A stretch of DNA of 64,000 nt from Haliotis rubra (lineage: Eukaryota): NCBI RefSeq assembly GCF_003918875.1, contig NW_025767479.1, forward strand, positions 1,302,001-1,366,000, read 5' to 3'. Of the stretch, positions 18,001 through 52,100 are shown piece after piece. Each line of letters starts with the position of its first letter. The stretch's first letter is position 1. The notes under the pieces were generated by a model that did not search any database, was not told the DNA's origin, and was given only the letters and a program-made list of their open reading frames with translations. A program made the translations under genes and the position numbers.

Positions 18001-19994
18001 ATTAGATATATTGTAGGCCTTCAACCTCTTTTTGCTGACACAATGTGCCTAGGCGTCAGAATTTTATCGTAAAACAGCACCTCAATGGGGATTTCAGTTA
18101 GAAGAGGTCCCCTGCAACCAATGCTTGTCATAAGTATAACTCAACAGATCCAGTATCAGGCTTAGTGACTTGGTTAATGGTGTGGCATTGTACTCCAGTC
18201 CCGTTGGATGTTGATCATGATATCAATCACTGTATTTTGGTCCTAACTCAATTAATGCAGGATGCTATCACTCTGCTGAATGCAGCATTTAACATGTTTA
18301 AAGGAAATAATTTGTCTCATGTTAAAAGTGACAGCACCACTTTCACAAAGGACTGACCTGCTTGTATAAGCCAGTCTGCCAAAACATTGACAGTCTGAGC
18401 TATTGCTAAGTAGTTGTCTGACAACAGTTCCACAACCCTCTCTGGAGAACCACCTGCTTGCAAAAATCTGTCAACAAGAATTTTTAAATCATCTTGACAA
18501 TGTGCATCCTGTGTATATGTAATGTCGATATTTCCACATCTGAGCACAAATTCAAAAGCAGCATGCAGTTGATACAAAAAGAAAGAATGATAAACCTGCA
18601 AAACATTAATCAGGAAACAGACATTGGGAAAATGTCAATACAGCTTTTAAGCCAAGTTGTTTACAATGCTATGGAGAATCTTTATTGTCTCTTTATCCTT
18701 TTAAGTTAGACATTCAGAGTATTTAGCCACATGCAGTAACTTAATGATTTGCCAAATTCCACCAATGGGCCACACAACTGGAAATGTGGTCCTACAACAA
18801 TATATCCTTTTGAAGCATTGTTTAATAGATTGTTTTGACTTTATCTTTAAAGACATATTGAATTGTCCCTTAAAGAGAGCTGTCGGCATCTTGCATACAT
18901 TTTAAAATTAGACCTTTATTAGAACTTCCAGGTCTGTGTTTCAACTTGTACACGACCCAGGTTAGAATCAATATTTAGTAACCCATGCTTGGTGTAAAAG
19001 GCGACTAACAGGTTCTAATGGGACTTGGTTGACACATGTACCTAAATTGCGTAGTCAATGCTCATGCTGTTGATCACTGGATTGTTTGGTCAGAGACTTG
19101 ATTATTTACAGACCGCCGCCATATAGCTGGAATATTGCTGAGTGTGGCTTAAAACTAAACTCACTCACTCACTTAACTTGTACACATACCTTTTGAGCAC
19201 TGTGAAAATATTGGGCTCCATAATGTAGTCCTTGCTACTAAAAGATTCAAGACAATCTTTCTTTGTGGCTTGTCTCTCTTCCTCGTCATCCTCCATGAAG
19301 GGATCCATCTCAGGTGACTACAGGACAAATAATGTGTGAATGCTAACCACAAGAAATAATAATTTGTATTAAATTGTAACAGAATGTATGCATTTAGGGA
19401 ACACATGTAATAATTGGATATCTGTGATGATCAAAATATAACTTCAGGTGAAAATTGTTGCTGAAGTCACTCGGAGATTGGTATCTACATGATCTGTAGA
19501 ATACTGTTGATACATGATATTCAATACATGAGTATTTATTGAACACCTCTGTTATTTAGTTCACTTCATTGATGTATCATTTTATCATTTCGACTTATAC
19601 ATTTTCTTACGTGACCCCTTACTCACAGAAAAGCATAAAACAAGCATGATCATCATGACATACCGACTAAAACAAAGTGAACGCAAATAAATAATGATGA
19701 TTATGAAGAAAAATAATTATGATAGACATGATGAAAATCCTTCATAAGCATAATCATGATAACAAGTCAAACAGTCTGTAGTCATGGGGTGCCGCTGATA
19801 AGTGAGACTGGACGCAGGATTCAAGGAAGAGTAAATTTTCAGTCGTGTTGCAACAAGGATCAATCATACAGCCGGCACGTTTCATTTTATTCATTATTTG
19901 TGTTTAGACGAGATAAAGAAAATTCATTTATCAACAATACCCCAACATCGTCCTCTGACATTCCCTCGACATGGTCCTCTTCGTAATCAGACAT
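9076..19994 (-). CDS. NELFCD: Negative elongation factor C/D (TH1-like), 16 coding exons, 575 aa
   Basis: Exons 19941-19994, 19190-19317, 18358-18467, 17272-17381, 16779-16886, 15915-16067, 14951-15081, 14628-14748, 14191-14257, 13676-13788, 12123-12259, 11561-11675, 11333-11428, 10815-10955, 9754-9883, 9076-9089 join in phase (1728 nt). Motifs recognised from NELF-C/D: [76 protein letters not shown]. Confidence 0.96.
9162..9580. mobile_element. hAT-like MITE
   Basis: Terminus CAGCCCTA; 8-bp TSD GTACTGAG at 9154-9161 and 9581-9588. Confidence 0.8.
9754..9883 (-). CDS. NELFCD: NELFCD exon 15
   Basis: [43 protein letters not shown] |GTAAGT. Confidence 0.95.
10077..10434. mobile_element. MITE with ~55-bp TIRs, flanked by TA
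   Basis: TAGTCCATTTGACTTCATTTTAGACC... / ...GGTCTAAAATGAAGTCAAACGGACTA. Confidence 0.8.
10815..10955 (-). CDS. NELFCD: NELFCD exon 14
   Basis: [47 protein letters not shown]. Confidence 0.95.
11333..11428 (-). CDS. NELFCD: NELFCD exon 13
   Basis: [32 protein letters not shown]. Confidence 0.93.
11561..11675 (-). CDS. NELFCD: NELFCD exon 12
   Basis: [38 protein letters not shown]. Confidence 0.94.
12123..12259 (-). CDS. NELFCD: NELFCD exon 11
   Basis: [45 protein letters not shown]. Confidence 0.94.
12529..12940. mobile_element. MITE, PIF/Harbinger-like (tentative)
   Basis: Imperfect TIR GGGGCGGCCACATCTTA / TAAGTTGTGACCGCGCC; many short internal gtagtt repeats. Confidence 0.55.
13676..13788 (-). 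CDS. NELFCD: NELFCD exon 10
   Basis: [38 protein letters not shown]. Confidence 0.95.
14191..14257 (-). CDS. NELFCD: NELFCD exon 9
   Basis: [22 protein letters not shown] |GTGAGT. Confidence 0.93.
14628..14748 (-). CDS. NELFCD: NELFCD exon 8
   Basis: [40 protein letters not shown]. Confidence 0.95.
14951..15081 (-). CDS. NELFCD: NELFCD exon 7
   Basis: [43 protein letters not shown]. Confidence 0.95.
15512..15685 (-). mobile_element. SINE family A, full length
   Basis: TSD CAACCGACCTTGGA on both sides. Confidence 0.88.
15915..16067 (-). CDS. NELFCD: NELFCD exon 6
   Basis: [31 protein letters not shown]...NLPEFT |GTAAGA. Confidence 0.95.
16779..16886 (-). CDS. NELFCD: NELFCD exon 5 (GC donor)
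   Basis: [36 protein letters not shown] then AAG|GCAGGT. Confidence 0.92.
17272..17381 (-). CDS. NELFCD: NELFCD exon 4
   Basis: [37 protein letters not shown] |GTGAGT. Confidence 0.95.
18358..18467 (-). CDS. NELFCD: NELFCD exon 3
   Basis: [40 protein letters not shown] bounded. Confidence 0.95.
19190..19317 (-). CDS. NELFCD: NELFCD exon 2
   Basis: TAG| SPEMDPF...[14 protein letters not shown] |GTATGT. Confidence 0.92.
19941..19994 (-). CDS. NELFCD: NELFCD exon 1 ([18 protein letters not shown])
   Basis: ATG at 19994, acidic N-terminus, donor GGG|GTATTG, phase 0 fits exon 2. Confidence 0.8.
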
Positions 19995-23500: not shown

Positions 23501-26500
23501 TTTCAATACTCCCCTTCCACTTAGCTATATACACTCCAAAACATTTGACATAATCATAACTAGTAGACATATTCATAAAGAGTATTTTGCTGTTGCGGGG
23601 GATATTGATGACCTTGTCTACTTGTTGGTATTTGTGTCACTTTGTATACTACTGGTATAAATAATGACAATTTCCAAGTAAAACTTGATTATGAAAATGT
23701 CTACATCTGCATGTAAAAGGTTCCACTATTAGACTGAACTAAAATAGTTAAAGCGCTCTTCATTTTTGACTCTAAACATGTGCTTTATTACATGTGTACA
23801 TATTTTGTATATGCTGTTTCTGTATACTTTTATATAATAAATACATACTTATTTCATTTAATATTGTGTTGTTATGTTAGGCCCCTGTAAAATTGTGTTG
23901 GGCAGAGTTCCTGTGGGTAAAGTTCCTATGGGCAGAGTTCCTGTGGGGAAAGGTCTGTACACCAAAAGGTCGTGTTAAGTGCTTTTTCAGCAGTCTGAAA
24001 CTTGATTACTGTTTCCATGCAGCACCATCAGGAGCAAGAGTGGCAGATTCCGTGGACTGGCAGAGAAGTCAGGCCATCGCCATGGTGATAGCACACTGCC
24101 CCATGCAGACAGCCTCAGTGGAAGAATACTACAAACACATCTCTCCCCAGGTGATTACATGACGGTGGTCTGTTGTTGTAACAATCTCATTAAAATTATC
24201 TTCCACACCAGTAGGATATCTCTGCTTGATGATCTGAAAAATGCTTCAAAGGAGTGAGTGAGTAAGTTGAGTTTTACGCTGCACTCAGCAATATTCCAGC
24301 CATATGGCGGCGATCTGTAAATAATCAAATCTGGACTATCCAGTGATGAACAGCATGAGCATGAGCATCGATCGGCGTAAAACTCACTCACTCCTATAAA
24401 AGATTTGTCGGATCATCAATAGGAGGTTATATCTGATAGATATTCAAATCAGCCTTTAGCATCATCAAGGCTTCTCAGTATGAGTGCAGCATTCAGAGCA
24501 GCATGTTATATTTTGGATGTCAACAATGCACGGAAATGTGCAGTTCTGAATGGAAATAATAAAGGAAGCTTTTTTAAAGGAAGCAGTTTTGGTGATTTTG
24601 TATGCACCACTGATCTCCTAGTCGCATCAAAAGAATACTTGTACATGTATTTTTATTCATTGTCTTTTTTTTAAATTGAAATGTCTGAATCTTGAATCTA
24701 TTGATGGAATTGTCAGATCTGCACACAGGGAGGTATCATGTTTGAGTAAATAATACAATTGTGTTAGTGAGTGAGTGAGTTTAGTTTTACGCCACACTCA
24801 GCAATATTCCAGCTATATGGCGGTGGTCTGTAAATAATCAAGTTTGGAACAGATAATCCAGTGATCAACATCATGAGCATCGATCTATGCAATTGGGATA
24901 CGATGACATATGTCAATCAAGTCATCGAACCTGACCACCCGATTCCATTAGTCTGTAATTGTTTATTGTCTTTTACAATAGCCATGAAGATCCGGGTGAG
25001 AATTGGTCTTTAGCAACTCATGCGTGTCGTCAGTGGCGACCATAAATACTGTGGAGTTTGGTGTTAAACAACAACCAACCAACCAATCAATTTTTTACAA
25101 CATATGTTAACTCGATTTTTCTCCAATATTATTGGAAGCTTTGCAGAGGGGATTCACAGACTTAAAGAACCACTAAACTTTGTTTTTTGTTACTCTTTTA
25201 ACCATTACATATGAAAGATTTGTGGTTAGTCTTATGCGGAACACCAAATTTATTCTTTAAAAACTTGTGGTTAATTAATACCGAGCGATTAAAAGTGGCC
25301 AAAAAGTCGCCTGCTTCCCTCTCGCCCGCCAACGAAACCACAGACAGGTTACGTAACTCTGTCGCCAGAGCACTGCAGTGGCGTCATATGAGGAACGATT
25401 TTCAGTTAGTTGTATAGAAAGTGTGTAGCACGCTCATCATTTTGATGATTTCGACATGAAGCATGACATGCCGAATTGTTGCTTTGTCCTCAATTGCTCC
25501 TAGGGGTCGGGTGATGGTGTCACCATGCACAGATTTCCACAGGACCCCGCAGTTCGTGCTAAATGGGTTATGTTTGTGAGTGCGGTTGGCGGCGTTGTGG
25601 GAAGCCTGAAGCGATATCTTACTTGTGTTCAGATCGGCTCACGAAGTTAAAGAATCAAAACTACTTACTAGTTAAAGTAAAATATGTATATGATTGATGA
25701 CCATAAAGATTTTCCATAACACAACTTGTAACATAACGATTTCTTCCTCGGAAGTGAGGTTGTGGTCGAAGTAACAATAATATTGTAAGTAGTATTATAT
25801 TGACACCCACCTCGCTGCCAGGAGAGAAATTGTTATGTTATACGGCTATGTCATGCAAAATCCTATTGGCCATCAATAAAATACATATTTTACTACCAGT
25901 AGAAAGTAGTTTTGATTTTGTAACTTTCGGTGAAAACAAACCTAAATAGCATTTATCCACAGACTGGCGGATGTTCCGACAGAGCGCCCGCCATTTTGAA
26001 AATCGTAAAGTCTGTTAGAATTAATGAGATTATAGTTTGTTTTCATCAAGTTAGAAAATCAAAACTACTTTCTACTCGTAGTTAAATATGTATTGGAATC
26101 ATAACCAAAAGGATTTTGCATGACACAACTTATAACATAGCGATTTCTTCCACGGAGGCGAGGTGGGGGTCGAAGTCACAATACTCTTGCGATAAATTTC
26201 TTGCTACATTCACATGGTTAATGTCCACTCACCAGTATGTAGATACTAGTCAGTCAATGTCGTCTTTATATTTGGTCTTATAATCCTAATTAGTTTATTA
26301 TCACACTTGTATGCATTTTGAAACTAAATAAAAAGCAGACGATCTGCTGATACTTATAGTGAATTTATAACAGAACTGTAATATCTAGACATTTTATAGT
26401 TTGCCAATGTGAATCATAATTGGCAGCACACACACCCTAGTGCATGTTGTCTGTCTCATTACACTTCACGGTGAAAACAATGATTCTGTTGAATGCTACG

Positions 26501-29500
26501 ACAAATGAATAAAAACAAAATGCAAATATTAAAATTAAAACAGATTAAAGTTATAGGAACAATATCAGGCCATTACCTTGTTTGAGGAATGTATCCATCA
26601 ATATCCACAAAACTGTTCAAAATGATGTGTCTTTTAACAGTTTAATATACGAAAAAGTGATAAATCTTTTCAGGTATTGGTGTATAGTCTCATTGGTCAC
26701 CCAAGATAGCACACCTGGCAACTAATTGCATAATGTCCGCCTTTCATTAAAACAGTAATTTAGTTAGCCAATAATGGGCAATCAATCAATGTATTGCCGG
26801 TTAATCCTTTGAAAGAAGGGCGTTATTTTTACGCTTGACACCGACACGACAGAGTGTATTCAGTATAGATTAGTAAATCTACATACATAAACACTACCTT
26901 TTGACAATCCGCTGTGTAAGATAAAAGTAATTAATCAATCAGCGTGTTATCGGTTAATCCTTTGATCGATGTTTATAATGTTGAATATTTACTCCAGACA
27001 CAAGAAATGCCAAATGGGAACCTTTGTCGGGTAATCTAAGTGTGTTACCACTAATTATACCTGTTATAAATTCATTAACTGACCATCAAGTGAATGATGA
27101 CAAATAACATGTGTAGGTTTATACCACCTAACACGGGTTACAACAAGGGAGTATTAATTGCTGTATTGCATGTGAAAACTTATGGGCCGACACTGTTTGA
27201 GAATACAAACAGATTTTTACATGACATGATTAAATATCGAGGTAAAAAACACAGAAATGGGATCAATTTGGATCAGTCATTATACAAATAGGGCCCTACT
27301 GACACCAATCAATTGTGACAGAAGCGTCTATGAAAACAAGTTGTAACTTCGGAAACTAGGCAAAGCAGGAGACAAAATTAAATGCCAGTAGATTGTGAGA
27401 ACATATAGCTTTCATTTTTCCACAACAATTGTCACGATTTCAGGTTTATACAAGCCTGTAAACAAGATAATTTACCCCTAAAATGTAGATGAATTCTGCA
27501 TCGGCCCTCAAAGCTATTCCTCATATGGCGTCACAGAGTTAAGCTACCGGCTCTGATTGGTTGAAATTTAGATTCGCGGGTGAGAATTGTGCACTGTTGT
27601 CAAAAAGGTCGATTTAAGTCAATTAAAGGTCGAAATGAGTAGTTTTAATGACAGGGTTTCATTTATAACGATGCCAGTTAGTGATTTATGTATTTTTAAC
27701 CCCTAGGGTTTATGTGACCTTTAATATCAAATCATGCTGTCATGAAACAAGTCAAAGATAGAGTATTATGTCAATGAAGAAGAGAAATTATACCAATTAA
27801 TCAACAGGTGGCAAATTACTTACATACTTTAAATTATGGCGCTACTTCATTGTAACCTTGGGGCGGTGGGGTAACCTAGTGGTTAAAGCGTTCGCTCGTC
27901 ACACCGAAGACCCGGGTTCGATTCCCCACATGGGCAAAATGTGTGAAGCCCATTTCTGGTGTCCCCCGCCATAATTTTGCTGGAATATTGCTAAAAGCGG
28001 CGTAAAATCAAACTCACTCACTCATTCACTCATTGCAACCTCAGTGTGTGATGTCATATATTAGCACTGTGTGAAATGTCACTACAGGGTAGGATATATG
28101 GCCCCAGCACATATTTATCAGTATCTTGGAACAAATTGTTCAGAAACCTACATAAATTATATTTAAGGTAAATGAAATTAACTTTACATTCATGCAACAC
28201 TGTTTCGCTATGTTTACATGTAGATTTTTAAAATACCAGTATTGGGTAAGGTTATCTGTTTTGAATACAGAATAGTTGACACCATTAACACTATTTATGT
28301 TTAGTCTCTATGGTTTCATATGCACAACTTACTTACAGAACAAAATGGGTGCTAACACTTCATTTTGGTGATGAAATAAATTCATTTGTTAAATGTTTTA
28401 TGAGTTTTGATAACACTGGATAAAATATAACACCAACCTTCGTAACTAGAAATGGAAGTTAACAGTATTGTCCATATGAATACTGCCTCATCAAAACTTT
28501 TAGAGTTTGTGCTCCATATTAATATAACTATATTCCAGTGTTTACACTTTCAGATAAGAGGCCTGCTTCATCACAGTGATCCTAAGGTTACTCAGAGGTT
28601 TCTGAGGGTGATCGTGACCCTCATTAAGGAGATGACCAGTCAGTATCCATCACTGGGACAACAGCACCTGCTGGACCCCCTGGTGTCTCCGCTACAGCAG
28701 TGTGTGGACAGTCATGGTGAGTGAGTGAGTGAGTGTAGTTTTATGCAGCTTTTAGCAATATTCCAGCAACATCACGATGGGGGACACCAGAAATGGGTTT
28801 CACACATTGTACCCATGTGGGGAATCGAAATCCGGGTCTTCGACGTGACGAGCGAACATGGTGAGGAAGGTGTCACAGGTGCAATTGATTGATGCAGATG
28901 TCTGTTCCTGATCTTTCTTTGTAGAATTACTTTGACTAAGTCGCTTGTCATGAGAGGATAGTGTTTAATGTGCCTGTTTATTGTTATTCTTAAGGTACAT
29001 CAGTGACTTCCAAGATACAGGTGGTAGCATGTGGCAAGACTTTGACCCGATGTATAGAAGATATCTACAAGGTAGGGATCTCTAAACAGTCATCCAGGTT
29101 GGTAAGAACAGGATTCAATTAATGTCAGATTTGCCTACCTTCAGCTTGACTAAATATGTAGATGGAATCGCAGGTTAACTCTGATTTGTCCTCACTGTGC
29201 CCATGTTTACTAAAGTGGTAAACATCTATAACAGGATTACATACTAGATCAGGATATATAATGATAGCACTATTTTCCATGTGGCACCAAACTCCTCACT
29301 GTACTGTGTTGCAGGTGTATGTGATCAGCACGGAGGCCAGGGACTGTCTCTGGCCAGTCCTCCGTCGCTATGTGGCAGTTCTCTTCCAGCTGTACTTCAG
29401 CAGCAAGGAGGGCGTGTCACACCTCAGGTGGGTACGTAAGGGATGCAGGCCATGTGGAAACATTCAGTTGGTCTGTGATTTGTCTTATCAAAAAAAATCT

Positions 29501-32500
29501 TCCCATCCTTGGATCAGTCAACAGTCAATAAAGCAGGTCCAGCAAGTCACTGAACATGTGATTTAAGTTCTTTTAATATGTAATCAGGTTGGATGTGATC
29601 TTGATCATGTAGATCTAGTATGGTCATATTGCCATCTATTGGTTTGTCCATTAACTTACTGTTATGTTACTGTATTGTTGCTGTAATTATGCTGTAATGT
29701 TGCTAAAATGTTACTGTAATGTTACTGTAATGTTCCAGTAATGTTGCTGTGATGTTGCTGAAATGTTCCAGTAATGTTGCTGTGATGTTGCTGTAGTGTT
29801 GCTGTGATGTTACTGTAATGTTACTGTAATGTTGCTGTGATGTTGCTGTAATGTTACTGTAATGTTGCTGTGATGTTACTGTAATGTTGCTGTGGTGTTA
29901 CTGTAATGTTGCTGTGGTGTTACTGTAATGTTGCTGTGATGTTACTGTAATGTTGCTGTAATGTTACTGTAATGTTACTGTTGTGCTGTAATGTTACTGT
30001 AATGTTGCTGTAATGTTACTGTAATGTTGCTGTAATGTTGCTGTAATGTTGCTGTAATGTTACTGTAATGTTGCTGTAATGTTGCTGTAATGTTACTGTA
30101 ATGTTGCTGTAATGTTACTGTAATGTTGCTGTAGATGTTGCTGTAATGTTACTGTAATGTTGCTGTGTAGTGTTTGCTGTAATGTTGCTGTAATGCTGTA
30201 ATGTTGCTGTAATGTTGCTGTAATGTTGCTGTAATGTTACTTCAATGTTGCTGTTATGTTGCTGTAATGTTGCTGTAATGTTGCTATAATGTTACTGTAA
30301 TGTTACTGTAATGTTGCTGAAATGTTACTGTACTGTAGTGTTGCTGTGATGTTGCTGTGATGTTACTGTAATGTTGCTGTAATAATGTTGCTGTAATGTT
30401 ACTGATTTTTGCTGTAGTGTTGCTGTGATGTTACTGTAATGTTACTGTAAATGTTGCTGTGATGTTGATGTAATGTTGATGTGATGTTACTGTGATGTTG
30501 CTGTAATGTTGCTGTGATGTTGCTGTAATGTTGCTGTAATGTTGCTGTGATGTTACTGTAATGTTGCTGTGATGTTACTGTAATGTTGCTGTGATGTTGC
30601 TGTAATGTTACTGTAATGTTGCTGTAATGTTGCTGTAATGTTGCTGTAGTGTTGCTGTAATGTTACTGTAATGTTGCTGTGATGTTTGTTGCTGTAATGT
30701 TACTGTAATGTTGCTGTGATGTTACTGTATGTTACTGTTGCTGTGATGTTACTGTAATGTTGCTGTGATGTTGCTGTGATGTTACTGTAATGTTGCTGTG
30801 ATGTTGCTGTAATGTTACTGTAATGTTGCTGTGATGTTGCTGTAATGTTGCTGTGATGTTGCTGTAATGTTACTGTAATGTTGCTGTGATGTTGCTGCAA
30901 TGTTGCTGTAATGTTGCTGTGATGTTACTGTAATGTTGCTGTGATGTTGCTGTAATGTTGCTGTGATGTTACTGTAATGCTGCTGTAATGTGACTGTAAT
31001 GTTGCTGTGATGTTGCTGTAATGTTGTAATGTTACTGTAATGTTACTGTAATGTTGATGTGATGTGACTGTAATGTTGATGTGATGTTGCTGTAATGTTG
31101 ATGTGATGTTGCTGTGATGTTACTGTAATGTTGATGTGATGTTACTGTAATGTTGATGTGATGTTACTGTAATGTTGCTGTATGTTGATGTGATGTTACT
31201 GTAATGTTGCTGTGATGTTGCTGTAATGTTGATGTGATGTTGCTGTAATGTTGCTGTGATGTTGCTGTGATGTTACTGTAATGTTGCTGTGATGTTGCTG
31301 TAATGTTACTGTAATGTTGCTGTGATGTTGCTGTAATGTTGATGTGATGTTACTGTAATGTTGATGTGATGTTACTGTAATGTTGATGTGATGTTACTGT
31401 AATGTTACTGTGATGTTGCTGTAATGTTGCTGTGATGTTGCTGTAATGTTGCTGTGATGTTGCTGTAATGTTACTGTAATGTTGCTGTAATGTTGCTGTA
31501 ATGTTGCTGTAATGTTGCTGTAATGTTGTACTGTAATGTTGCTGTAATGTTGCTGTAATGTTGCTGTAATGTTACTGTATGTTGCTGTAATGTTACTGTA
31601 TGTTATGTTGCTGTAATGTTACTGTATGTTGCTGTGATGTTGCTGTAATGTTGCTGTATGTTGCTGTAATGTTACTGTAATGTTACTGTATGTTGCTGTA
31701 ATGTTGCTGGCATCAGTGTAACAATAGTCCATCCTTTCTCTCAGGTCATCCTGTGAAGACATACTCATCACCTTCCTCAAGCAGGCTGAACCAGATGTTT
31801 CCCTGGACATTCTGTGGCTGCTGGCTACTGGTGTCCATGGTAACAGTGTGAAGGACATATCACGGTGTCCCACTCAGTTGATGTTCCAGCCAGGAGACAG
31901 TGGTGGGCTGCGTGCTGTACTGGCCCCCTCCGACAGGTGAGGTGGAGGATCAGCTAAACCCCTCCTGTTGGTTTGTGCAGTTTCTGACAGGTGTGACCAA
32001 AAACATGTACAATTCTGCACCATCTCCTGTAGTCCACCATTTGTTGTTATTCACATCTGAAAACCACAAAAGTGTTTGGTGTCATCCAACTGCATCCAAT
32101 GAAAATTAGGTTCTTCCTGGTTAGGCTTATTCAAAATTACACAAAAGATACCAACATTCAGTCACACAACCTCCGAGGGACTGAGAATATTGTTACATTA
32201 TGTTTAGTTTGTTAATTGTGAAACCATTTTGGATGTCCCCACTTTTCATCTATGTATCATAGTTTACAAAATTACATTAGATATAAGTGACACTATTTGG
32301 CATGCGCTATCGCCAAAGGCTCGCATAATACAATTTTTATTCCTAATATATGATATTAATGATACAGAAACACACTCGGTTAATAATCTCTATGTAACGA
32401 ATAATACTGAGCCTAGGTTTACTTTGACTGTGTTGTATGTATGCAGTTTAACATTTACTGTGTTGTAACAGTGTAAAGGAAGACAGGATTTATTGGTCCA

Positions 32501-35500
32501 TGTGTTGAATGAATGCAGTGTTTACTTGTGTTTTGACAGTTGTGAGGAAGACGGCATCTGTGTGGAGACTCGGGTGCGCTGCCTGGTGGAGCTGGTGAAG
32601 CACCTACAGGACAGCAGTGTCACAGGGGACTTCTTTATCAAGCTGCTCCAGGTATACGAGTCACACTACACTTGCTCATCAACAATGTACAATTCATTCT
32701 TGAAGCTTTGGCATCAAAACACCATGCCAAGATTTATGTGTGTATGTCTGCATTGGTAAGGGCTTTGTGTCTACAAATTGCAAGCATTGACCAGTAGGTT
32801 GCTACTTGTAGGATATATACTCTTGGAAACAAAAAAGGGAACACATGAAAGTACAAGTGTTCCTGTATTCTTGTACTTGCATGTGTTCCCTAATGAGAAT
32901 ATTATTTATTAAAGACTACATCAGTATGTATTTTCATATATTTAAGTCATAGGTAAATAGTTGTCATGTTAATTACAGTAAAAAATGCAAAGATGCCCCT
33001 TTGGTATAGTGTTAGTTAGTTGTCATCCTCCTCTTCAGGTTTCTATCTTTAGAATGTGACTTTCAATCACATCCATTGTTTGTTCAGTGAGAACAGTATT
33101 ACAATGTATTGGTAAATGAGGTATGACAAAATGATCACCATACTTTGTGGTGTATGGTAGTTATGAATGGTATGTGTTTTTGTTCATAGGAGCTAACGAT
33201 GATGGTGTCATCTCAGACTGGTGATGGAGAATCAATTTCTGTCTCCTGCCCCGAGCCAGAGAAGGAGCTGCTAATGCTGGAGCTTCAAGATACACAGGAA
33301 GTGGAACTCTTCAACAGGAGGCTGATTGTGCTGAACCTTCTGGCCTCTATGTGTGAAGAGCTGGGGCCGTCCTGTCTTAACAAAACACAACACATTCTGG
33401 CATTTGTCAGAGTAAGTAGTTGTGTAGCTTATCTATTTACTTACTTTTAAGGTGTACATCTCTGATCTCTGCATGAACTTCATGTTGTCACTTCATTTGA
33501 AGAAACAAAACTGCAAAAGACACAAGAAAATATGGTGACATGCAGGTGATGTTCAAAGTCATGTTAGCTTCGTGGTTAAAAGAGTTGCTCAGTCACGCCG
33601 AACACCGGGTTCGATTCCCAACATGGGTACAATGTGTGAAGCCCATTCCTGGTTTCCCCTGCCACAATATTGCTGGAATATTGTTAAAAGCGTATAAAAG
33701 CACTCACTCAAAGTCATGTCCTTCAAATGGTAAAGCAGTCATTATAATTAACATTCCATATTGTTTTGATGTGTTACCTCTGAAGCAATTATTTGGAAGA
33801 TATAACATTTCTGTTCTGAAATTTGAGGTAGTCAATCTGTAGGTTAGATACCTCATATTATTCTTCTTCTTTGGGGGCAGGGGACTGATTGCTTCAGATG
33901 TATGAATCAGTTGAAATATGTCTAAGTCTATGAATGACAGGTCTTCAGTGTCATGGTAGGATGAACCAATATTCTTTCCCTTACCCCCGAATTTAGATAT
34001 AATATCATGCTTGCAGGTCACCGAAGACCTGGGTTCTATTCCCCACTTGGGCACAATGTGTGAAGCCCATTTCTGGTGTACCCCGCCGTGATGTTGCTGG
34101 AATATTGCTAAAAGCGGCGTAAAACCAAACTCACTCAGTCATTCTTGCAGGTAACTCTGGAGTGAGGTGTGTGGAGTTTAGATATAACATGTATGGTTAC
34201 AGGCGACTATGGTACGAGGTGTGTGGAGTTTAGATGTGACATGTGTGGTTACAGGCGACTCTGGAGCGAGGTGTAGAGGTGTGTGGAGTTTAGATGTGAC
34301 ATGTATGGTTACAGGCGACTATGGAACAAGGTGTGGAGGTGTGTGGAGTTTAGATGTGACATGTATGGTTACAGGCTTACTCTGGAGCGAGGTGTAGAGG
34401 TGTGTGGAGTATAGATGTGGGCGTGTGGTTACAGGCGACTCTGGAGCCGAGGTGTGTAGAGGTGTGTGGAGTTTAGATGTGACATGTATGGTTACAGGCT
34501 TACTATGGAGCCGAGGTGTAGAGGTGTGTGGAGTTTAGATGTGACATGTATGGTTACAGGCAACTCTGGAGCCGAGGTGTGGAGGTGTGTGGAGTTTAGG
34601 ATGTGACATGTATGGTTACAGGCGACTCTGGAGCCGAGGTGTGGAGGTGTGTGGAGTTTAGATGTGACATGTATGGTTACAGGCGACTCTGGAACGAGGT
34701 GTGGAGGTGTGTGGAGTTTAGATGTGACATGTGTGGTTACAGGCTGACTCTGGAGCCGAGGTGTAGAGGTGTGTGGAGTTTAGATGTGACATGTGTGGTT
34801 ACAGGCTGACTCTGGAGCCGAGGTGTGGAGGTGTGTGGAGTTTAGATGTGACATGTATGGTTACAGGCGACTCTGGAGCGAGGTGTAGAGGTGTGTGTGG
34901 AGTTTAGATGTGACATGTGTGGTTACAGGCTGACTCTGGAGCGAGGTGTAGAGGTGTGTGGAGTTTAGATGTGACATGTGTGGTTACAGGCTGACTCTGA
35001 GCCGAGGTGTGGAGGTGTGTGGAGTTTAGATGTGACATGTATGGTTACAGGCGACTCTGGAGCGAGGTGTGTGGAGGTGTGTGGAGTTTAGATGTGACAT
35101 GTATGGTTACAGGCGACTCTGGAGCGAGGTGTAGAGGTGTGTGGAGTTTAGATGTGACATGTATGGTTACAGGCGACTCTGGAGCGAGGTGTAGAGGTGT
35201 GTGGAGTTTAGATGTGACATGTATGGTTACAGGCGACTCTGGAGCGAGGTGTAGAGGTGTGTGGAGTTTAGATGTGACATGTATGGTTACAGGCGACTCT
35301 GGAGCGAGGTGTAGAGGTGTGTGGAGTTTAGATGTGACATGTATGGTTACAGGCGACTCTGGAGCGAGGTGTAGAGGTGTGTGGAGTTTAGATGTGACAT
35401 GTGGTTACAGGCGACTCTGGAGCGAGGTGTAGAGGTGTGTGGAGTTTAGATGTGACATGTATGGTTACAGGCGACTCTGGAGCGAGGTGTAGAGGTGTGT

Positions 35501-38500
35501 GGAGTTTAGATGTGACATGTGTGGTTACAGGCGACTCTGGAGCGAGGTGTAGAGGTGTGTGGAGTTTAGATGTGACATGTGGTGTGGGGGACTCTGGAGC
35601 GAGTGTGGAGTTTAGATGTGACATGTGTGGTTACAGGCGACTCTGGAGCGAGGTGTAGAGGTGTGTCGGGCTACCATGGAGGAGCTGACTGGACTGTTTG
35701 AGTCGGAGACACTGAGTATGGCCATGGGATTGCTGACGGCAGTCATGGGAGGAGCTGTACAGGTGAGCCATGATGTCATTTTATGTAGCATTTATTCAGA
35801 GTATTTTAACATTTTCCTTCCATTGTTGGTACGGGTCTCTCTCAGTTCATCTCAAATCTAAAATAGACGGAATTGTTAACACTGCAAGTAAAATCACTGG
35901 AGTCAGATTTGAATGTTTATCATCAATATATGAGCGGCAAATTGTGAATCAAGCTGTCAAACTCATATCTGACCGTACTCAATACTTAAATTCGGAATAC
36001 ATCCTCCTCCAAAGTTCCAATTGTGAAAACTAAGAGAGCCCGTACATCCTTTATTCTAAGTACCATATCTCTCTTAAACAAATGTGAAGATACCTAAATC
36101 AAAGAATTTATGTAAATATGTTTGGTATCTCTCTAATGTGTCAGTAGCTCTGCTGATATAAAACAAATTCCAGAAAAGGCATTAAAGTATTATTCTATTC
36201 TATTCTATTCTATTCTATTCACATGACTTGCATCATGTGGTATATTTTTTACAAATCTCCACTCCAACTACAGTATCTAATATATGTGAGGCTTGAAGTT
36301 TGATACAAAGACTAGAACAATGTTGTGGTGTCCCTGACTCTGAGATGTTTGACTGATAACTGTTCCAGCGTTGAATTGACCTGATGCATGAAACTCACAT
36401 TTGTCAATTTTGCAACAGGTTGAAGAAGCTGATAGACAGATGATGCAGGAGTTGTTGCCCCTGCTTGATGGAATCAGACAGGAACATGCATCAGATGAAG
36501 TTAGAGAAATGGCAGATGATATTCGCATTGCCATAGCAACCAGAGGTGCCGTATGGTCAGAGCTGATGAAGAGCAAACAAGATTTAAAGAAGCAAACACC
36601 ACAGGTTAGAGAATATTCACTGTGTCACAGAATGCATTGTAGATTTACAGTATCCGAAAGGCTCACTGGTCAACATTGGGGATTCTGGATTAGAACTGGT
36701 CAACCTATGCTTGTTTTGTTTTGTTGTTTAATGCTACATTTGACAATATTCCAGCTATATGGCAGCGGTCTGTAAATAATTGAGTCTGGACCAGATAATC
36801 CAGTGATGAACAGCATGAGCATCGATCTATGTACATGGGATACAATGACCCGATCCCCGAAGCAGGGGATATAGTATTAGGCTCCGTACGTACGTACGAA
36901 TTGGAATATCTTAAGAACCATTGACTGGATTCTTTTCATACTTGGTACCTAGGTTCAACACAGTATAAGAAAGGTACCCTTTGTCAGGTTTGGTGACCTT
37001 GACCTTCATTTCAAGGTCACCAGGGGACTTAACATTTTACCCTTGTCAGCGAGATATCCCAAGAACCGTTCACTGGATTTTCTTCATATTTGACACCAAG
37101 CTTCATATAGGGAAGGTGCAGGGCCCAGTCGAGTTTGGTGACCTTCACATAATTTTCAAGGTCACAGCGACACTTTGAAGATTTCAGCATGTTAAGATTG
37201 TCAGCAAGATATCTCAAGAAGGGTTCACTGGATTTTCTTCATAGATTTTCAAGACTTCTCTTGAATGTTTTTTGATAAGCAATTTCTCTATTACTATTTT
37301 TTGCATATTTCATACACCATGGCATTCATGTCAAGGTCAAAGTGAGTCTTGAAAATATTTGTGTGTTTGAACAGCTACAGAGCAGAGCAAAATATCAAGA
37401 GAGGTTGACTGGTCATGTTTTTGTTGACATTTAACTTCATCTTTCATTACTCTTTAAGTTTGATTTGACAATATGCGGTGGGGATTATGTCACCTTAGTG
37501 ACAACTGCTTGTTCATTGATTAAATTTGATTTTCTATTGTCTAATAATTACTGGAATTTTGTGTTTGTAAAACTCTGTTGTCACTTTAAAGGTCTGTGTC
37601 ATGCAGTCAAATTTGTTCAACATATACCATACATGTCTGCATGTGTTTATTTAGGCAAAAGACAAAGGGACAGACAAGAAAAAGGCCACTGACCGTAAGA
37701 CTAAGAAACCATTGATAGAAGTTATCTCAGAAACATTGAATGAAACTTCACATGATGTCAACAGCTGTCAAGCTGAAATGATCAAAAACGAGGATGAGGT
37801 GCAAGCAGGTAACACAGGTTTAGCTGTTCCACATGAAAGACCAACTCCAGCCTCCCTCGAATCTTCTGGGCACCAACCTGTGTCTTCCCCGAAAGAAGGC
37901 AGTCCTTTCCCAGGAGAAAGAGAAGGCTCGGTTCAAGCCAGCAGAAAAGGAGGCTCTCCTCGTACAGGTGCAGAGGCAGACTCGCCTCACCCAAGTGGAG
38001 AACTAGAACAAGCCTTCAAGGAGCTATGTGACCCCGAGATCCCTGTCCGAGGTCATGGCTTGCTGCGTCTGACTCACCTCATTCAAAACAAGGATCCTTC
38101 AGTCTTGTCTCGACTGGAGACCTTGGTCAAGATATTTGAGGAGAATCTGCAACATCAAGATTCCTATCTGTACCTGGCTTCGGTCAACGGACTTGCAGCC
38201 CTCACTGACCGATTCCCTGATGTGGTGGTGCCAAGACTTGCCCAGGAGTTTGCAGAGACAGGTCCGCAGAAGTCAGCAGAACTGAGGATGAAACTTGGAG
38301 AAAGTTTAGTGAAGGCAGCAAGGAATTTAGGTATGTTTCATATAAAGTGCATTTAGATAGCTGCCTTGTAATAACTATGAGATGCCCAGTTTCGGTACAG
38401 TTACAGAATACCGGATACCTACCAGCCACGTGCACTTCTATTATAGGGAAGCACGAGCTGTAAAATTGTAAAAAATAAGGGTGCATGAAAATAAAAAATT

Positions 38501-41500
38501 AACCATAAAAATCGGATTACTTGGGACGACTTCCGGCCAGTAAAACTAACCAACGATTTTGAAATGAAAGGTAAGTTATCACAAATAAAAATATATCCGT
38601 ATTTGAAAAATGGGACACATGGAATTCTGGGAGTTGGAGCGATTCCGCATAATCCTAACCCTAACCTTATTCGTTAAACTACCCTTAAAGAAGATAGTAA
38701 CGTGTATCCAAGGGTTAAAAAAGTAAGTACGCTAAGAAAGCGAAGTTCTATAGTTTTCAAAGATGGCGGAAGGTATCCGGCAATCTGTAATCTTACCCCA
38801 GTTTCTTATGTGACCAAATTCACTTGTGTTACATGTAGTCCTGTAATGATTCACTCAGGTATTTGGGGTGGTGGGGTAGCCTAGAGGTTCGATCAAACCT
38901 GGGTTCGAATCCCCACATGGGTACAATGTGTGAAGCCCATTTCTGGTGTCTCTGCCATGATATTATATTTTGCTAAAAGCAGCGTAAAACTAAACTCACT
39001 CACTCACTCCTTGTCTTCATCTGCTAGTAAACTATGGTTACAAGATATTAGCCAACTGACAGTCTTCTTGTGTCTGTCAAGGTACGTCAAAAGCAGGTGT
39101 GAGGACACAATAATTTTGTGTTTGTAATCTGAACACCAAAAGTAACATCATGTGAATTCTGCATTCACAAGTTCACTCACTAACTCACGTATTCAGTAAA
39201 TTCAAGCAGTATTCCTGCATGAATTCAATTCATCCTTCATGATCACTATATGACGACTAATCTCTGTGTTAGGACCAAGATCCTTTATAATACTCAGATA
39301 CATGCAGCACTTTGATCATTGGTAGGACTCTGATTCATGTTTGGATTTAGATCAATGTCTGGACTCTGACTTCAATGTGTGATAGGTCTCAGATCCAGGG
39401 TAAGACTGAGATTCATGGATGCCATACTGTTAATACAAAACCAATTCTGTCCTGAAACAGGAGACATGATCCCCAAGTATCGCGAACTGCTGCTAGCTGC
39501 CGTCTTGTCAGGAGCTCGGAGTGATGATGCCATGGTCCGTGCCAGCAGTTTGTCCAATCTGGCCGAGATGTGCAAGCTGTTGAGGTTCTCCCTTGGAAAT
39601 GTGCTTCATGAGGTGTGTACCAGTGGAACATTTTCTTGGGGGACATTTGAAGGTGTTTTGAGTTGCTGAGAGGTGTTTGCCATATTTTGTTCATAAAAAG
39701 ATACATAATACAATTGTATGAGATAGAATAAGTACTGGTATTTAATGTTAAATTCATAGAGAATACTACACGAGGTCTCATTACATACGAATGATACGAA
39801 ACGAGTGTCCTTCCTATGGTATCTGACTGACCAATGGCGAGGTCAGATAACATAGGAAGATCACGAATTCAGATCATTCGTATGTAATGAGACCAGTAAT
39901 ATTTTATTTATTACCCCGTCTTACATGCATTAAATTGACAAAATAGCGTATTTTTGTTATTTTTGGTTTCAAACCGAAACCGGTTTCATAAAGAGGTTCG
40001 CGGAAGAGTTTTGTATTGTAGTACAATATTTGCATGGCGTCACACTGTAATGATGTCACTGCCATGGTAACCGGCGCCACGATGCATGTCAGTTGTCATC
40101 GCCTTCGTACAGCCTCCTACAGTAAACTACTCCGTTGCACCCGTTTCTTGGTTTGCAGTTGCTTCATTAGGCTAACATCACTGGTGGAAACATTGCGTTT
40201 ATGTTTTTAGACAGATATAATGTCTCAGTTCGACTCACAATTAAACAGCGACGCGGCAGCGTTCGCAATGTTTACTTTCCCACAATGCATTTAAGTTATA
40301 GAATGAATGAATTCACGTGTTCGTTATGAATGAAAAAATAGTTAAGTGAGACTGTGACCTAATAGAGGTCATGGGTTATCCAATCAAATCGTTAGAATCT
40401 CAGGTCAAGTCGTTACGACACAGGTCAACGCGATACGACACTCGTGTGACGTACGAGATTAGTATGCAACTACCCATACGTTGACCACGTGGGTAATAAA
40501 ATGTAATATTAACCCAACTGTTTGCTGTACATATTGGATGCAAAAATGTGTTGTAAAGAATATACAAATTTGTCTCCTTTCAGTAAAACAAAATTATGTG
40601 TCTGAAATCACTAACCACTAAAATTAATACTCTGGAATACATGTGTAATATTATATGGTTGGTACTTGATGGTTACACAGCCCTGTACCTGACACATGTT
40701 TTTATACATGTCAACCATGGAGGCATGAACACTTTATTAATACAATTCCACTACTCCCTAGGTGTTTGAGTGCTGCTCCAGCATTGTGAAGACTGACCCT
40801 GACCCAGAGGCCAGGAAGGCGGCCATCTTGACAATCACCCAGCTATTGCAAGGGTTGGGAGCTGATGCACCCAAGGTGAGTTGGCAGCAGACATATGAAC
40901 TCTTTGATGTCAACTTTTGTAGTGTGAGAAACTTGTGAATGCAGAATTAACATGAGGCAATATTGGTGTTCTGATTACAACCACAAAATGATTGTGTCCT
41001 CACACCTGCTTTTGACCCACATTGACAGACACAAGAAGTACTGGCAGTTGGCTAGTATCTTAACCATAGTTTACTAGCAGATGAAGGCAAGGAGGAGTAT
41101 GGTTTTACGCCGCTTTTAGCAATATTCCAGTAATATCACACGGGGAAAACAAGAAATGGGCTTCACACATTGTACCCATGTGGAGAATTGAACCAGCACC
41201 TTTGGTTTGACGAGCAAACGCTTTTACCTTTAGGCTACCCCACCGCCCCTGGAGGCGAGTGGGTCATGGTTTTGTCTTTCAGAATGGCAACGGACCGCCT
41301 CCGTGGTGTAGTGGTTAGAGCATCCACCCGGAGAGCGGAAGGTCACAGGTTCAATCCCCGACCCCGTCCTACCAAAAGACGTTAAAATATGGTACTTGTT
41401 GGTCCCTGCCTGGCGCTCGGCATTACTGGGTACAACAAGGACTGGTCGGCTCGGAGTCAGTATAATGTGTCTGAGTGGGGTATTCATGCTTCACTGCGTC

Positions 41501-49133: not shown

Positions 49134-52100
49134 CGTGCGTGTGCGTGCGCGCGCGTGCAGAGGTGCGCACTCCCCCGCCCCCTTTTTGGTCCTGTAAGTA
49201 TATTAAATGACTCTTGAAACTCCCGTGAAAACGAAGTGGCATTCCCCCCTTTCTCAAAAGTGTGCACCCCCCTCCCCTTCTCAAAAGGCTGAATCAGCCC
49301 CTGGTCTTCTCGTTTCTTGGCTTACTTTCACGTATTTTCCATTATATTCTAATTATTTCAATCTTTTTTTCAACTTTCGATTTCTTATTGATATTTTTTC
49401 AAAATTTCTGCTATAGTGTCCCGTTTTTAAGATGCTGCATAATTGAAATAACGAGAAAATTATGTATGTAAAGAGGGAAAATGAGAAAATTTAAAGAAAT
49501 AAAAAGTGGCATCATTAGGCTTCCGTACGAAAGAATTTTTGGCGCACGGTGATCACGTCATGGCGGTTTTTGATTACAGTGGACAGACTGAGGAAGCTCG
49601 CGTGATAGATAAGAAGAATATATCCAAAAACGGTGGCAGTCAAGGTTGGAATTTGTCCCTAGCGACCTATGGCCGTTGTGAGAGGCGACATAGGCGGTCA
49701 GGCTCGCTGACAATAAGTGTGTGCCATCGTACCCCGAAAACAGGAGTCTTTGTCGTAACAGCAATCACTGATATGTATGAGACTCGATTTTACGAGGCTG
49801 AAGTCATGTATCTGTAATATGTTTGTGTAAAACAACAAACAAATAACGTACGGCATAAACCGCAGAAGTTTGCACAATTGTCCTTTGCCCATTGGGAATA
49901 CTGGCCACCACAGGCTGCCTTCCCGTAATCCGGACAGTTGTTGAGCTTGTCAGCACAGCTCCCGCCAAGAGCGCTGGTAGTTTCTGGAAGTGGAAGTTAC
50001 ATGACGTTAGAGTGTCGATTGTAAGCCATTAATATGAATATTATCATAACAAACACACATGTGATACCATCCATATCAAGCGTATTATATACACACAGAA
50101 CTCAGTTAAGCATCCACTGACATATCTCACGATTGAATGAGCCCCGATCTTAACCCTTTGGAGCATATCTGGGACATGACTGGTCGTCGTGTGCAACATA
50201 GGGATCCTCCTGGACAGAACCTGGCCCAATTGGAAGCCGTTTTACACGCGGAACAGACTGTCCCATCAGAGGATCAGAAGGCTGACAGGGGGTATGAGGA
50301 GGAGGGTGCTGGCTGTCATATAGTCACATTGAGTTTACACTCGGTATTGACCTTGAACCGTGTAAGAAACGAAAAATGACATTTTGAATGTTCATATTCA
50401 CCAATAAATTCAACATTAAACATTCCAGGGCCATAGCTGTAGAGACATGGTTTCGTATGAAAATCAGTAGGTTTTTTTAAATTAGCAATTATCATAACAA
50501 AATCTAACATGGACTCCAATCATTTTGTCGTTTTTTTATGAGTCAAAGGATCATACGGGTCAGAAAAACTCATGTTTGTCCATAGTTTTATGTAGGTGCT
50601 GAAAACATATCATTGCAAAAATAGAGGGGTGCTTAATTGGGGCTGCTGTTTATCGTTACTTCTCAAACCCTCCACAGGGGTAATAGTTTCCGTAAACATT
50701 TAACATGTAACTGACTTTTGTTTGATTTCTTGTTTTCCGTTTTATGCTGTTTGCATGGAAACACACTTTAATTCGGAAGCGGATTCTTTTCTACATATGA
50801 ATGGTTCGTGTTGTGTCACATATTATTATCATTAAGTCTCAATATCCATCGTTATTGTTTATCAGTATGGTTATGATAAGCTTCACTGATTGAGTTAACT
50901 CGTCATGCCAAAGATCCGGGTTTGATTCCCGATATGAGAACCACGTGTGAGATCAGTTTACTGGTGTCCTCGGTTACTAGAATATTGCAGAACGTGGCCT
51001 AAAGACCAATCAGCCAACAATCGGCGTTACTGATGCTACCATATGTATTGTCTTTGATTTATTGTAATACTTACGGCAAAGGTTACAGGTTTTTTGACAG
51101 TTAATCTGGGCGAACTCAACATAGGTAGAACACAGGTCACTTCCAAGGTCGGCACAATTTGGCAGCTTGTCCACACATTGTTGTGAAGAGGTACTGGTCT
51201 GTGGGCTTCCTCCTGCAGACATGTAACAGGAAGTGCCAGTGATTGGTATAAAGAACTAACCAGAGGAGCTCTTTATCATCAATGTCCTCAGAATTAGCTG
51301 TGATTATATAGATTGACTGTTATTAATGACGTTGCTTTGCACAATTGGTTTCCAGATCCAGTTTCTCACTGTGTAACCATAATGTTCACCGCTTGCCAGA
51401 CACAACGGAATCTCTATTCTCAAATGCAACACTGATCCTTATAAAACATAATCTGAATTTGCATCATACTTTTATTTCTAACCTTCAAAAACCGCATCTT
51501 TAGCTGTAGCGGATATCATTACAACCTAAATCTCCACAGAACACAATGAGTATTTGGTAAGCGCTTTTGTAATAATCTCAATATATGTATATACATCTGA
51601 TATATATCTGAAAGCATGAGTCACGGGGACATCCGGGTCAATCGTCGGGTCTAGCCATTGCCTACCGCTGGCATATAAGGGTCACCTAAGAAACGGTAGC
51701 CAACGGCAATACCCTTTTCTTGTAGGTGACCGGGGAAGTGGTAGTGGAACACACAGTGGCGTTGTATATGTTACAGTAAATATGTACAACCAGTAAAATG
51801 TATATTTACTGATTCCGTCAGAGATTATGTATATTTACTGATATTTTCTGGGAATATACATATTTACTGAAATCTACATTGATTCATTTTACCTTTGCTG
51901 ACATCAAGATCTAAGAAGATAGGACATATAAACAACGATTTGTTTGCTATATATATACTTACCACAGTAGGAGCGGTAGGGTAGCCTGGTGGTTAAAGCG
52001 TTCGATCGTCACGCTGAAGACCCGGGTTCGATTCCCCACATGGGTACAATGTGTGAAGCCCATTTCTGGTATCCCCCGCCGTGATATTGCTGGAATATTG

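What the first reader, a model, noticed from the sequence alone, without database searches (positions are those of the whole stretch)
28713..28865. Second case: a SINE tail now supplies the TANGO6 exon 5 donor
Seen: exon 5 ends CATG|GTGAGTGAGTGAGTGAGT, which is the antisense (TCAC)n tail of a 5'-truncated family-A SINE. The same 9-mer CATGGTGAG follows the SINE (28857-28865) as CATG|GTGAGG, the displaced ancestral donor. The new donor is closer to consensus, and the tail offers further GTGAGT donors at +4, +8 and +12 (+12 is in frame but includes a TGA stop). This is an independent event in another gene within the same 64 kb, so it supports the targeting hypothesis.
Basis: partly seen in the sequence, partly recalled or inferred. 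Interest (0 to 1): 0.78.

Follow-up and report, generated by a model that had tools for sequence, protein, structure and literature searches.

The report
SINE inserted on TANGO6 splice donor
In the blacklip abalone, an old mobile-element copy landed five bases into an intron of the TANGO6 gene and its GTGA-repeat tail rebuilt the splice signal; I saw three such hits, which hints that the tail steers this element to splice donors.

Summary
The window is Haliotis rubra. Exon 5 of TANGO6 (28554-28716) is followed by four tandem GTGAGT. These are the antisense tail of a 5'-truncated tRNA-derived SINE (28722-28856), which is flanked by an exact 9-base duplication, CATGGTGAG.

H. asinina carries the same SINE at the same junction with five shared derived substitutions, so the insertion is old and fixed. 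The RefSeq models of all three species and one spliced contig put the exon end at 28716.

Under target-primed reverse transcription the exon-proximal GTGAG is probably the original DNA that primed on the tail. The SINE then certainly supplies only intron position +6 onward (G to T, a slightly better donor).

"Targeting" holds only in a weak form. Eight of ten duplications start with 3-5 bases that continue the tail repeat, and GTGAGT is that repeat in antisense. I found a third hit by chance: an H. asinina SINE on the TANGO6 exon 15 donor. An earlier follow-up of this scan examined the first case, in this same window (s1-333080).

No genome-wide test or raw junction count was possible.

The parts
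28554..28716 (+). TANGO6 exon 5 (163 nt, ends in phase 1 with ...CAT G)
   Evidence: Pfam ARM_TANGO6 E 5e-12. Exact spliced mapping of XP_046550543.1. A 163-nt exon 5 is also present in H. rufescens and H. asinina. Contig X8 record 31 lies on 28551-28715 only.
28713..28721 (.). Exon-proximal copy of the target-site duplication CATGGTGAG. It holds the donor that is used, at 28716|28717.
   Evidence: exact 9-mer at both element ends.
28717..28734 (+). Four tandem GTGAGT, which are the antisense (ACTC)n SINE tail overlapping the duplication. Starts at 28717 (used), 28721, 28725 and 28729.
   Evidence: Rough donor scores are 8.6 bits for the first and 3.4 bits for the tail-internal ones.
28722..28856 (-). 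Unambiguous SINE sequence: the rest of the tail plus the body. It covers consensus positions 31-170. The A box is lost and the B box is kept with a one-base change.
   Evidence: 92.2% identity to consensus. Contig X1 record 8 bridges its 5' end.
28857..28865 (.). Second copy of the duplication, CATGGTGAG.
28861..28866 (+). Spare copy of the old donor, GTGAGG, followed by the original intron sequence.
   Evidence: Colinear with the H. rufescens empty site at L001 6710-6731. This part has been lost in H. asinina.
28995..29071 (+). TANGO6 exon 6 (77 nt), the acceptor partner.
   Evidence: The X8 depth of 1.58 in bin 29003-29191 equals 4.2 x 71/189, which fits the same contig.

Best explanation
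A 5'-truncated copy of an abalone tRNA-derived SINE with an (ACTC)n tail was inserted antisense into the first bases of TANGO6 intron 5. The mechanism was ordinary target-primed reverse transcription.

The gene's + strand was nicked after ...CATGGTGAG. Its 3' end GTGAG paired with the CUCAC of the SINE RNA tail and primed the cDNA. A staggered second nick then gave the 9-base duplication.

The exon border and the donor GT therefore stayed where they were. Three things changed. Intron position +6 went from G to T, making GTGAGT. Three further GTGAGT follow in tandem. A spare copy of the old donor, GTGAGG, now lies 144 nt downstream.

The insertion happened in the common ancestor of H. rubra and H. 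asinina, after the H. rufescens lineage split off. It is fixed and tolerated because the tail, read in antisense, is itself the donor consensus. Splicing still uses 28716|28717.

Donors are hit repeatedly because GTGAGT and GTAAGT are long matches to the tail repeat. That is a sequence coincidence, not recognition of splice sites.

Shown: the element, the duplication, the empty site, the orthologous filled site, the junction used, and the microhomology pattern. Inferred: the nick position, the annealing step, and neutrality.
For: - Sequence and duplication.
- Family, consensus and truncation.
- Empty site in H. rufescens with GTGAGG and a matching downstream flank.
- The same SINE at the same junction in H. 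asinina. It has the same tail length and five shared derived substitutions against the consensus.
- All three RefSeq proteins read DSH/DSQ|GTS across the junction.
- One contig of a run guessed to be RNA covers exactly exon 5. Depth arithmetic places the same contig on exon 6.
- Eight of ten duplications of tail-bearing copies begin with 3-5 bases that continue the tail register (TCA four times, CTCAC, ACT, CACT, TGA).
- A third donor hit, H. asinina exon 15, has the empty site in both other species.
Against: - Sequence alone cannot tell whether GTGAG at 28717-28721 is target or tail.
- Most duplications show only 3 bases of microhomology. Among about 2,600 TGA sites in the window, donors are roughly 1% or less (my estimate), so three donor hits are more than a 3-base rule predicts.
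- The RNA evidence is one low-depth contig (4.2) from a coded run of 'organism B' that differs by 4 letters in 165. Its join to exon 6 is inferred from depth, not listed as a joint.
- The partner LINE was not identified.
Confidence: 0.75

Rival explanations
1. Chance plus survival. Insertion has no preference for donors beyond the general 3-base overlap. This copy landed on the donor by luck and persisted only because its tail rebuilds GTGAGT.
For: The index case and the case at 51957-52150 were both picked by eye, so they are post hoc. Leaving the index case out, 1 of about 14 other TANGO6 insertions in three species lies on a donor. That gives P of about 0.05-0.1 under uniform insertion (my estimate). 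Antisense tails with intact GTGAGT also sit harmlessly inside intron 4, at 24252-24312 and 24763-24826.
Against: Survival can only remove insertions. It cannot enrich donor hits relative to neutral intronic copies. Three independent hits share the same architecture (exon, duplication, (GTGA)n, antisense SINE, duplication, intron) and all three are in the antisense orientation.
Confidence: 0.25
2. Dedicated donor targeting. The retrotransposition machinery recognises 5' splice sites as such, for example through transcription, bound U1 or chromatin, and not merely a short match to its tail.
For: Three donor hits were found in about 100 kb examined. This exceeds a rough expectation of about 0.3 per 15 events, even if any 5-base tail match is an equal target (and my estimate).
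Against: Most copies lie far from any donor, and half of the copies inside TANGO6 are in sense orientation. The duplications differ in everything but their first 3-5 bases. No known APE-type LINE recognises splice sites (my knowledge).
Confidence: 0.07
3. The duplication is only CATG, the nick fell at the exon border, the GT now used is SINE cDNA, and the true ancestral GT was pushed 144 nt downstream.
For: The sequence allows it. GTGAG at 28717-28721 is in register with the tail.
Against: A 4-base duplication would be the shortest seen. The others are 7-14 bases. Priming without any overlap is the exception in this family, seen in 2 of 10 copies. The resulting DNA is identical either way, so the difference has no functional meaning.
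Confidence: 0.15
4. Assembly artefact or a chance repeat.
For: None found. Short-read contigs do break inside the SINE.
Against: The independent H. asinina assembly holds the same exon-to-tail junction. Contig X1 record 8 bridges the SINE 5' end and the second duplication copy, and record 7 runs 28 nt into the tail.
Confidence: 0.01

Closest known systems
Tail-to-target microhomology in target-primed reverse transcription of CR1/L2/RTE-type LINEs and their SINEs (Ichiyanagi and Okada 2008, as cited in PMC6007223; Nishiyama and Ohshima 2018)
   Same: The element has a simple-repeat 3' tail. The start of the duplication overlaps the tail by a few bases. The duplications vary in sequence, and 5' truncation occurs.
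   Different: Here the repeat unit read in antisense is GTGAGT, the U1-binding donor consensus. The overlap rule therefore picks out splice donors, and the insertion repairs what it interrupts. The partner LINE and its clade were not identified.
Mollusc tRNA-derived SINEs with terminal tandem repeats (Matetovici et al. 2016, PMC4758252)
   Same: The host is Haliotis. The element has a tRNA-type head with A and B boxes, a body, a tail shared between families, and terminal short tandem repeats.
   Different: The passages of that paper that I read name (CACCT)n for Haliotis MESC SINEs and (CACT)n for Bathymodiolus. I did not establish whether this (ACTC)n family is one of theirs, and those passages hold nothing on splice sites.
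Transposable-element-derived splice sites, such as Alu exonization (my knowledge: Sorek 2002/2004, Lev-Maor 2003)
   Same: Antisense SINE sequence reads as a splice signal.
   Different: Alu creates new, mostly alternative exons inside introns. Here a constitutive donor of an existing exon is kept, and no new exon or intron arises.
Introner elements, whose target duplication recreates splice sites (my knowledge: Huff et al. 2016)
   Same: A target-site duplication carries splice-site bases, so the insertion is splicing-neutral.
   Different: Introners are DNA transposons that create a new intron in an exon. Here a retroposon lands in an intron that already existed (H. rufescens empty site).

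Membership tests
tRNA-derived SINE mobilised by a LINE (family A of this genome) | Many dispersed, diverged copies | tested here: met
   31 to 33 hits in 64 kb, and further copies in the H. rufescens and H. asinina loci.
tRNA-derived SINE mobilised by a LINE (family A of this genome) | Internal pol III A and B boxes in the head | tested here: met
   The consensus holds TAGCCTAGTGG and GGTTCGATTCC. ARAGORN calls no tRNA in the consensus. This copy lacks the A box because of its truncation.
tRNA-derived SINE mobilised by a LINE (family A of this genome) | Target-site duplication and a 3' simple-repeat tail | tested here: met
   A 9-base duplication and an (ACTC)4-5 tail.
tRNA-derived SINE mobilised by a LINE (family A of this genome) | 3' region shared with a partner LINE | not tested
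   Shown only that a second family shares the last ~60 nt and the tail. No LINE was identified.
Transposable-element-derived 5' splice site (exaptation) | The GT used in transcripts lies in element-derived sequence | tested here: inconclusive
   The GT lies in the overlap of duplication and tail. Only +6 onward is certainly SINE.
Transposable-element-derived 5' splice site (exaptation) | Transcripts use that site | tested here: met
   RefSeq models of H. rubra and H. asinina and one spliced contig. No raw junction counts were available.
Site-specific non-LTR retrotransposon (R2, TRAS or Tx1 kind) | Nearly all copies sit in one defined target sequence | tested here: not met
   The ten duplications share only their first 3-5 bases.
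Introner-like element | The insertion creates a new intron | tested here: not met
   The intron exists without the SINE in H. rufescens.

The most novel reading that the evidence does not exclude
In abalones, the (ACTC)n-tailed SINE/LINE system integrates preferentially, in antisense, into GTGAGT/GTAAGT 5' splice sites, because the nicked donor strand anneals to the tail. Each such insertion rebuilds a consensus donor. Splice donors would then be genome-wide hot spots, and the elements would push intron starts towards GTGAGT and leave spare donors behind.
Probability: 0.3. Interest if true: 0.7.

Novelty: new variant of a known kind. Interest (0 to 1): 0.5.

Why it matters
Insertions within six bases of a donor normally break splicing. 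Here the element's own tail is the donor consensus in antisense, so a hit on a donor is harmless and even slightly improves it.

If the bias is real genome-wide, it would be a simple chemical reason for a retroposon to favour exon/intron borders. It would also be a source of tandem and spare donors that could feed alternative splicing or nonsense-mediated decay. Together with the reported excess of sense-oriented copies in genes, it would give two opposite outcomes of the same tail: purged inside introns, tolerated on donors.

For annotation, it warns that four GTGAGT in a row after an exon are a SINE tail and not a splice-site oddity.

Tried and rejected
- The search for homologous proteins with the 54-aa exon peptide found nothing, because of the length filter and word index. 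The HMMER library search found the RefSeq protein instead.
- H. asinina isoform X2 is not on record as a gene product. Isoform X1 was.
- Read laying at 92% likeness was swamped by repeat contigs, with more than 2,000 joints. The joint table does not list the exon 5 to exon 6 junction. All four runs are contigs, so junctions at 28716, 28720, 28724, 28728 and 28860 could not be counted.
- Whether 'organism B' DNA (X3) carries the SINE is unresolved. Its contig fits up to 28723 and then has 30 unplaced letters.
- ARAGORN finds no tRNA in the SINE consensus.
- In H. asinina the SINE 5' part and the second duplication copy could not be found. About 1.3 kb of other sequence stands there.
- Two literature searches found no earlier description of SINE tails rebuilding donors.
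- I considered and dropped a larger annotated sample of Haliotis loci, because exon maps for neighbouring genes could not be obtained with these tools.
- Orientation bias: inside TANGO6 I count 5 sense and 4 antisense tail-bearing copies, so there is no bias in this window.

Full report
**What is there**

The window has no N runs. It reads ...GACAGTCATG at 28707-28716, followed by four GTGAGT (starts at 28717, 28721, 28725 and 28729), then GTGTAG and about 120 nt more. At 28857-28865 the 9-mer CATGGTGAG appears again, followed by GAAGGTGTCACAGG.

The stretch between the two 9-mers gives 31 BLAST hits across the window. From eight long copies I built a 170-nt consensus. It has a tRNA-type head with A box TAGCCTAGTGG and B box GGTTCGATTCC, and an (ACTC)n tail. 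ARAGORN does not call it a tRNA.

The copy at 28717-28857 lies on the minus strand. It matches consensus positions 31-170 at 92.2% identity, so it lacks the first 30 nt and the A box. A second family shares only the last ~60 nt and the tail.

**The gene**

Translating 28554-28715 hits Pfam ARM_TANGO6 at E 5e-12, above the curated cut-off. An HMMER search of the representative library returns one protein that is 100% identical over the exon. It is XP_046550543.1, the TANGO6 homolog of Haliotis rubra.

All 908 residues map exactly onto the + strand of the window, in 16 exons from 22384 to 42625. The window is therefore H. rubra. The model's exon 28554-28716 is joined to 28995-29071 and reads ...VDSH|GTSV....

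The full-length models of H. rufescens (1254 aa) and H. asinina (1260 aa) have two further 5' exons.

**Orthologous loci**

H. rufescens (locus L001) has no SINE here. Exon 5 ends ...GACAGTCAAG and the intron starts GTGAGGGAGGTGTCACAG. This is colinear with the window's second duplication copy and its right flank (CATG GTGAGGAAGGTGTCACAG). It is a clean empty site with a single copy of the 9-mer, and the ancestral intron start is GTGAGG.

H. asinina (L002) carries the SINE at the same junction, CATG|GTGAGTGAGTTAGTGAGTGTAG.... Against the family consensus, the two species share five derived substitutions: GTGTAG for GTTTGG, and ACATCACGATGG for ATATCACGGCGG. This is one insertion inherited by both species, not two.

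In H. asinina the SINE 5' part and the second duplication copy are gone. About 1.3 kb of unrelated sequence stands in their place. There the exon-proximal donor is the only copy left, and the RefSeq model uses it.

The insertion therefore predates the rubra-asinina split and postdates their separation from the rufescens lineage. Protein identities fit this order: 88% against 84%.

**Transcripts**

Only assembled contigs of public runs were available, so junction reads could not be counted.

In run X8 (guessed RNA, coded organism B), a 255-nt contig of depth 4.2 lies on 28551-28715 and nowhere in the flanking intron. The bin depths fit exon-only cover by that contig:
- 1.64 for 28436-28624 equals 4.2 x 74/189.
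- 1.58 for 29003-29191 equals 4.2 x 71/189.

The join to exon 6 itself is not listed among the joints shown. I infer it from this arithmetic.

Contig X1 record 8 bridges the SINE 5' end and the second duplication copy. Record 7 runs from the exon 28 nt into the tail.

On a rough matrix from 34 other TANGO6 donors of the three species, the scores are:
- Donor now used, ATG|GTGAGT: 8.6 bits.
- Old donor, ATG|GTGAGG: 7.3 bits.
- Tail-internal TGA|GTGAGT: 3.4 bits.

Any use of a later donor reads CAT GGT GAG TGA and meets a stop.

**Mechanism**

In SINE sense orientation the junctions read ...CCTTC CTCACCATG [SINE] ...(ACTC)n-AC CATG ACTG.... The duplication is CTCACCATG, and its first five bases continue the tail.

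In the standard model of target-primed reverse transcription, the strand complementary to the element is nicked and its 3' end primes on the RNA tail. The model's source (Luan et al. [quoted passage not shown]

Here the nicked strand is the gene's + strand, cut after CATGGTGAG. On that reading the exon-proximal GTGAG is the original DNA, and the cDNA begins at 28722. The border did not move. The SINE changed +6 (G to T) and everything after it, and the 'displaced ancestral donor' is the fill-in copy.

The alternative is a 4-base duplication with a SINE-derived GT. It gives the same sequence, but it would be the shortest duplication and one of the few without overlap.

**Is there targeting?**

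For ten tail-bearing copies with a clear duplication, eight begin with 3-5 bases that continue the tail register. In sense orientation the starts are TCA (four copies), CTCAC, ACT, CACT, TGA, TCC and ATA. By chance each would do so about 1 time in 64. A tail-to-target overlap is therefore real in this family.

GTGAGT is the tail repeat in antisense, and GTAAGT differs from it by one base. Donors thus offer 4-6 bases of overlap and should be favoured in antisense orientation.

Three independent hits have the same architecture:
- This one.
- The copy at 51970-52139 on a minus-strand gene, with duplication ACTTACCACAGTA. It was already followed up by this scan as s1-333080.
- A copy I met without looking for it. 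In H. asinina a near full-length SINE sits on the TANGO6 exon 15 donor (GAAG|GTCAGTTTAGTGACTG...). It has a 7-base duplication, AAGGTCA. H. rubra and H. rufescens have the empty site CAAG|GTGAGT.

About 15 independent insertions lie in TANGO6 across the three species. Two of them on donors gives P of about 0.002-0.006 under uniform insertion. Without the index case, P is about 0.05-0.1 (my estimates).

The unmasked window holds 113 GTGAG sites and 42 GTGAGT sites on both strands. Only a handful of these are donors, so a pure 5-base rule roughly predicts 0.3-2 donor hits per 15 events.

The data therefore fit a microhomology bias. They do not require recognition of splice sites, and they cannot exclude chance. 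Survival alone cannot create an excess, because it can only remove insertions.

**Comparison and novelty**

The element and its integration are ordinary: a mollusc tRNA-derived SINE with a tandem-repeat tail (PMC4758252) and overlap-primed reverse transcription.

What is unusual is that the tail repeat equals the donor consensus in antisense. A hit on a donor therefore repairs itself, and it has happened at least three times in about 100 kb examined. Two literature searches found no description of this.

I file it as a new variant of a known kind, of moderate interest. It needs a genome-wide test.

**Notes from other windows**

Other windows of this genome carry notes of a further donor hit (s1-325411) and of an excess of sense-oriented copies in genes (s1-347438, s1-320491, s1-352202, s1-335142). 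I did not test those. Inside TANGO6 I count 5 sense and 4 antisense copies.

Noticed in passing
L002 15480-15670 (H. asinina TANGO6 exon 15 donor); empty sites at window 40873-40885 and L001 about 18990-19000: A third donor hit. A near full-length family-A SINE lies antisense on the exon 15 donor, which reads GAAG|GTCAGTTTAGTG.... It has a 7-base duplication, AAGGTCA. H. rubra and H. rufescens read CAAG|GTGAGT without it. Both duplication copies carry C at intron +3.
   Followed up: partly
L001 6677-7340 (H. rufescens): About eight tandem units of roughly 84-92 bp. Each holds the last ~37 nt of exon 5, the donor GTGAGG and ~45 nt of intron, so the same exon border that took a SINE in the other lineage is amplified here.
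   Followed up: no
window 34216-35666: A 60-bp unit repeated 24 times, next to a sense SINE (34021-34144, duplication TCAT(T/G)CTTGCAGGT). The RefSeq model places a 24-nt exon (34255-34278) inside the array, which looks doubtful.
   Followed up: no
window 33565-33710 and L002 11801-11953: A sense-oriented SINE in another TANGO6 intron, with the same duplication TCAAAGTCATGT in H. rubra and H. asinina. This is a second shared, old insertion.
   Followed up: partly
window 24252-24312 and 24763-24826: Two antisense copies of the second family lie in intron 4. Each offers two intact GTGAGT on the gene strand, so antisense tails are not always purged from introns.
   Followed up: no
window 29659-31709: An 11-bp unit (CTGTAATGTTG) repeated about 185 times inside a TANGO6 intron, with a strong GC and AT skew.
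   Followed up: no
window 25034-27868: About 2.8 kb with very high contig depth in all four runs laid. It is a high-copy repeat just upstream of the SINE at 27860-28029. It was not identified and might be a LINE.
   Followed up: no
L002 5818-7180: In H. asinina, about 1.3 kb of unrelated sequence replaces the SINE 5' part, the second duplication copy and the start of the old intron.
   Followed up: no
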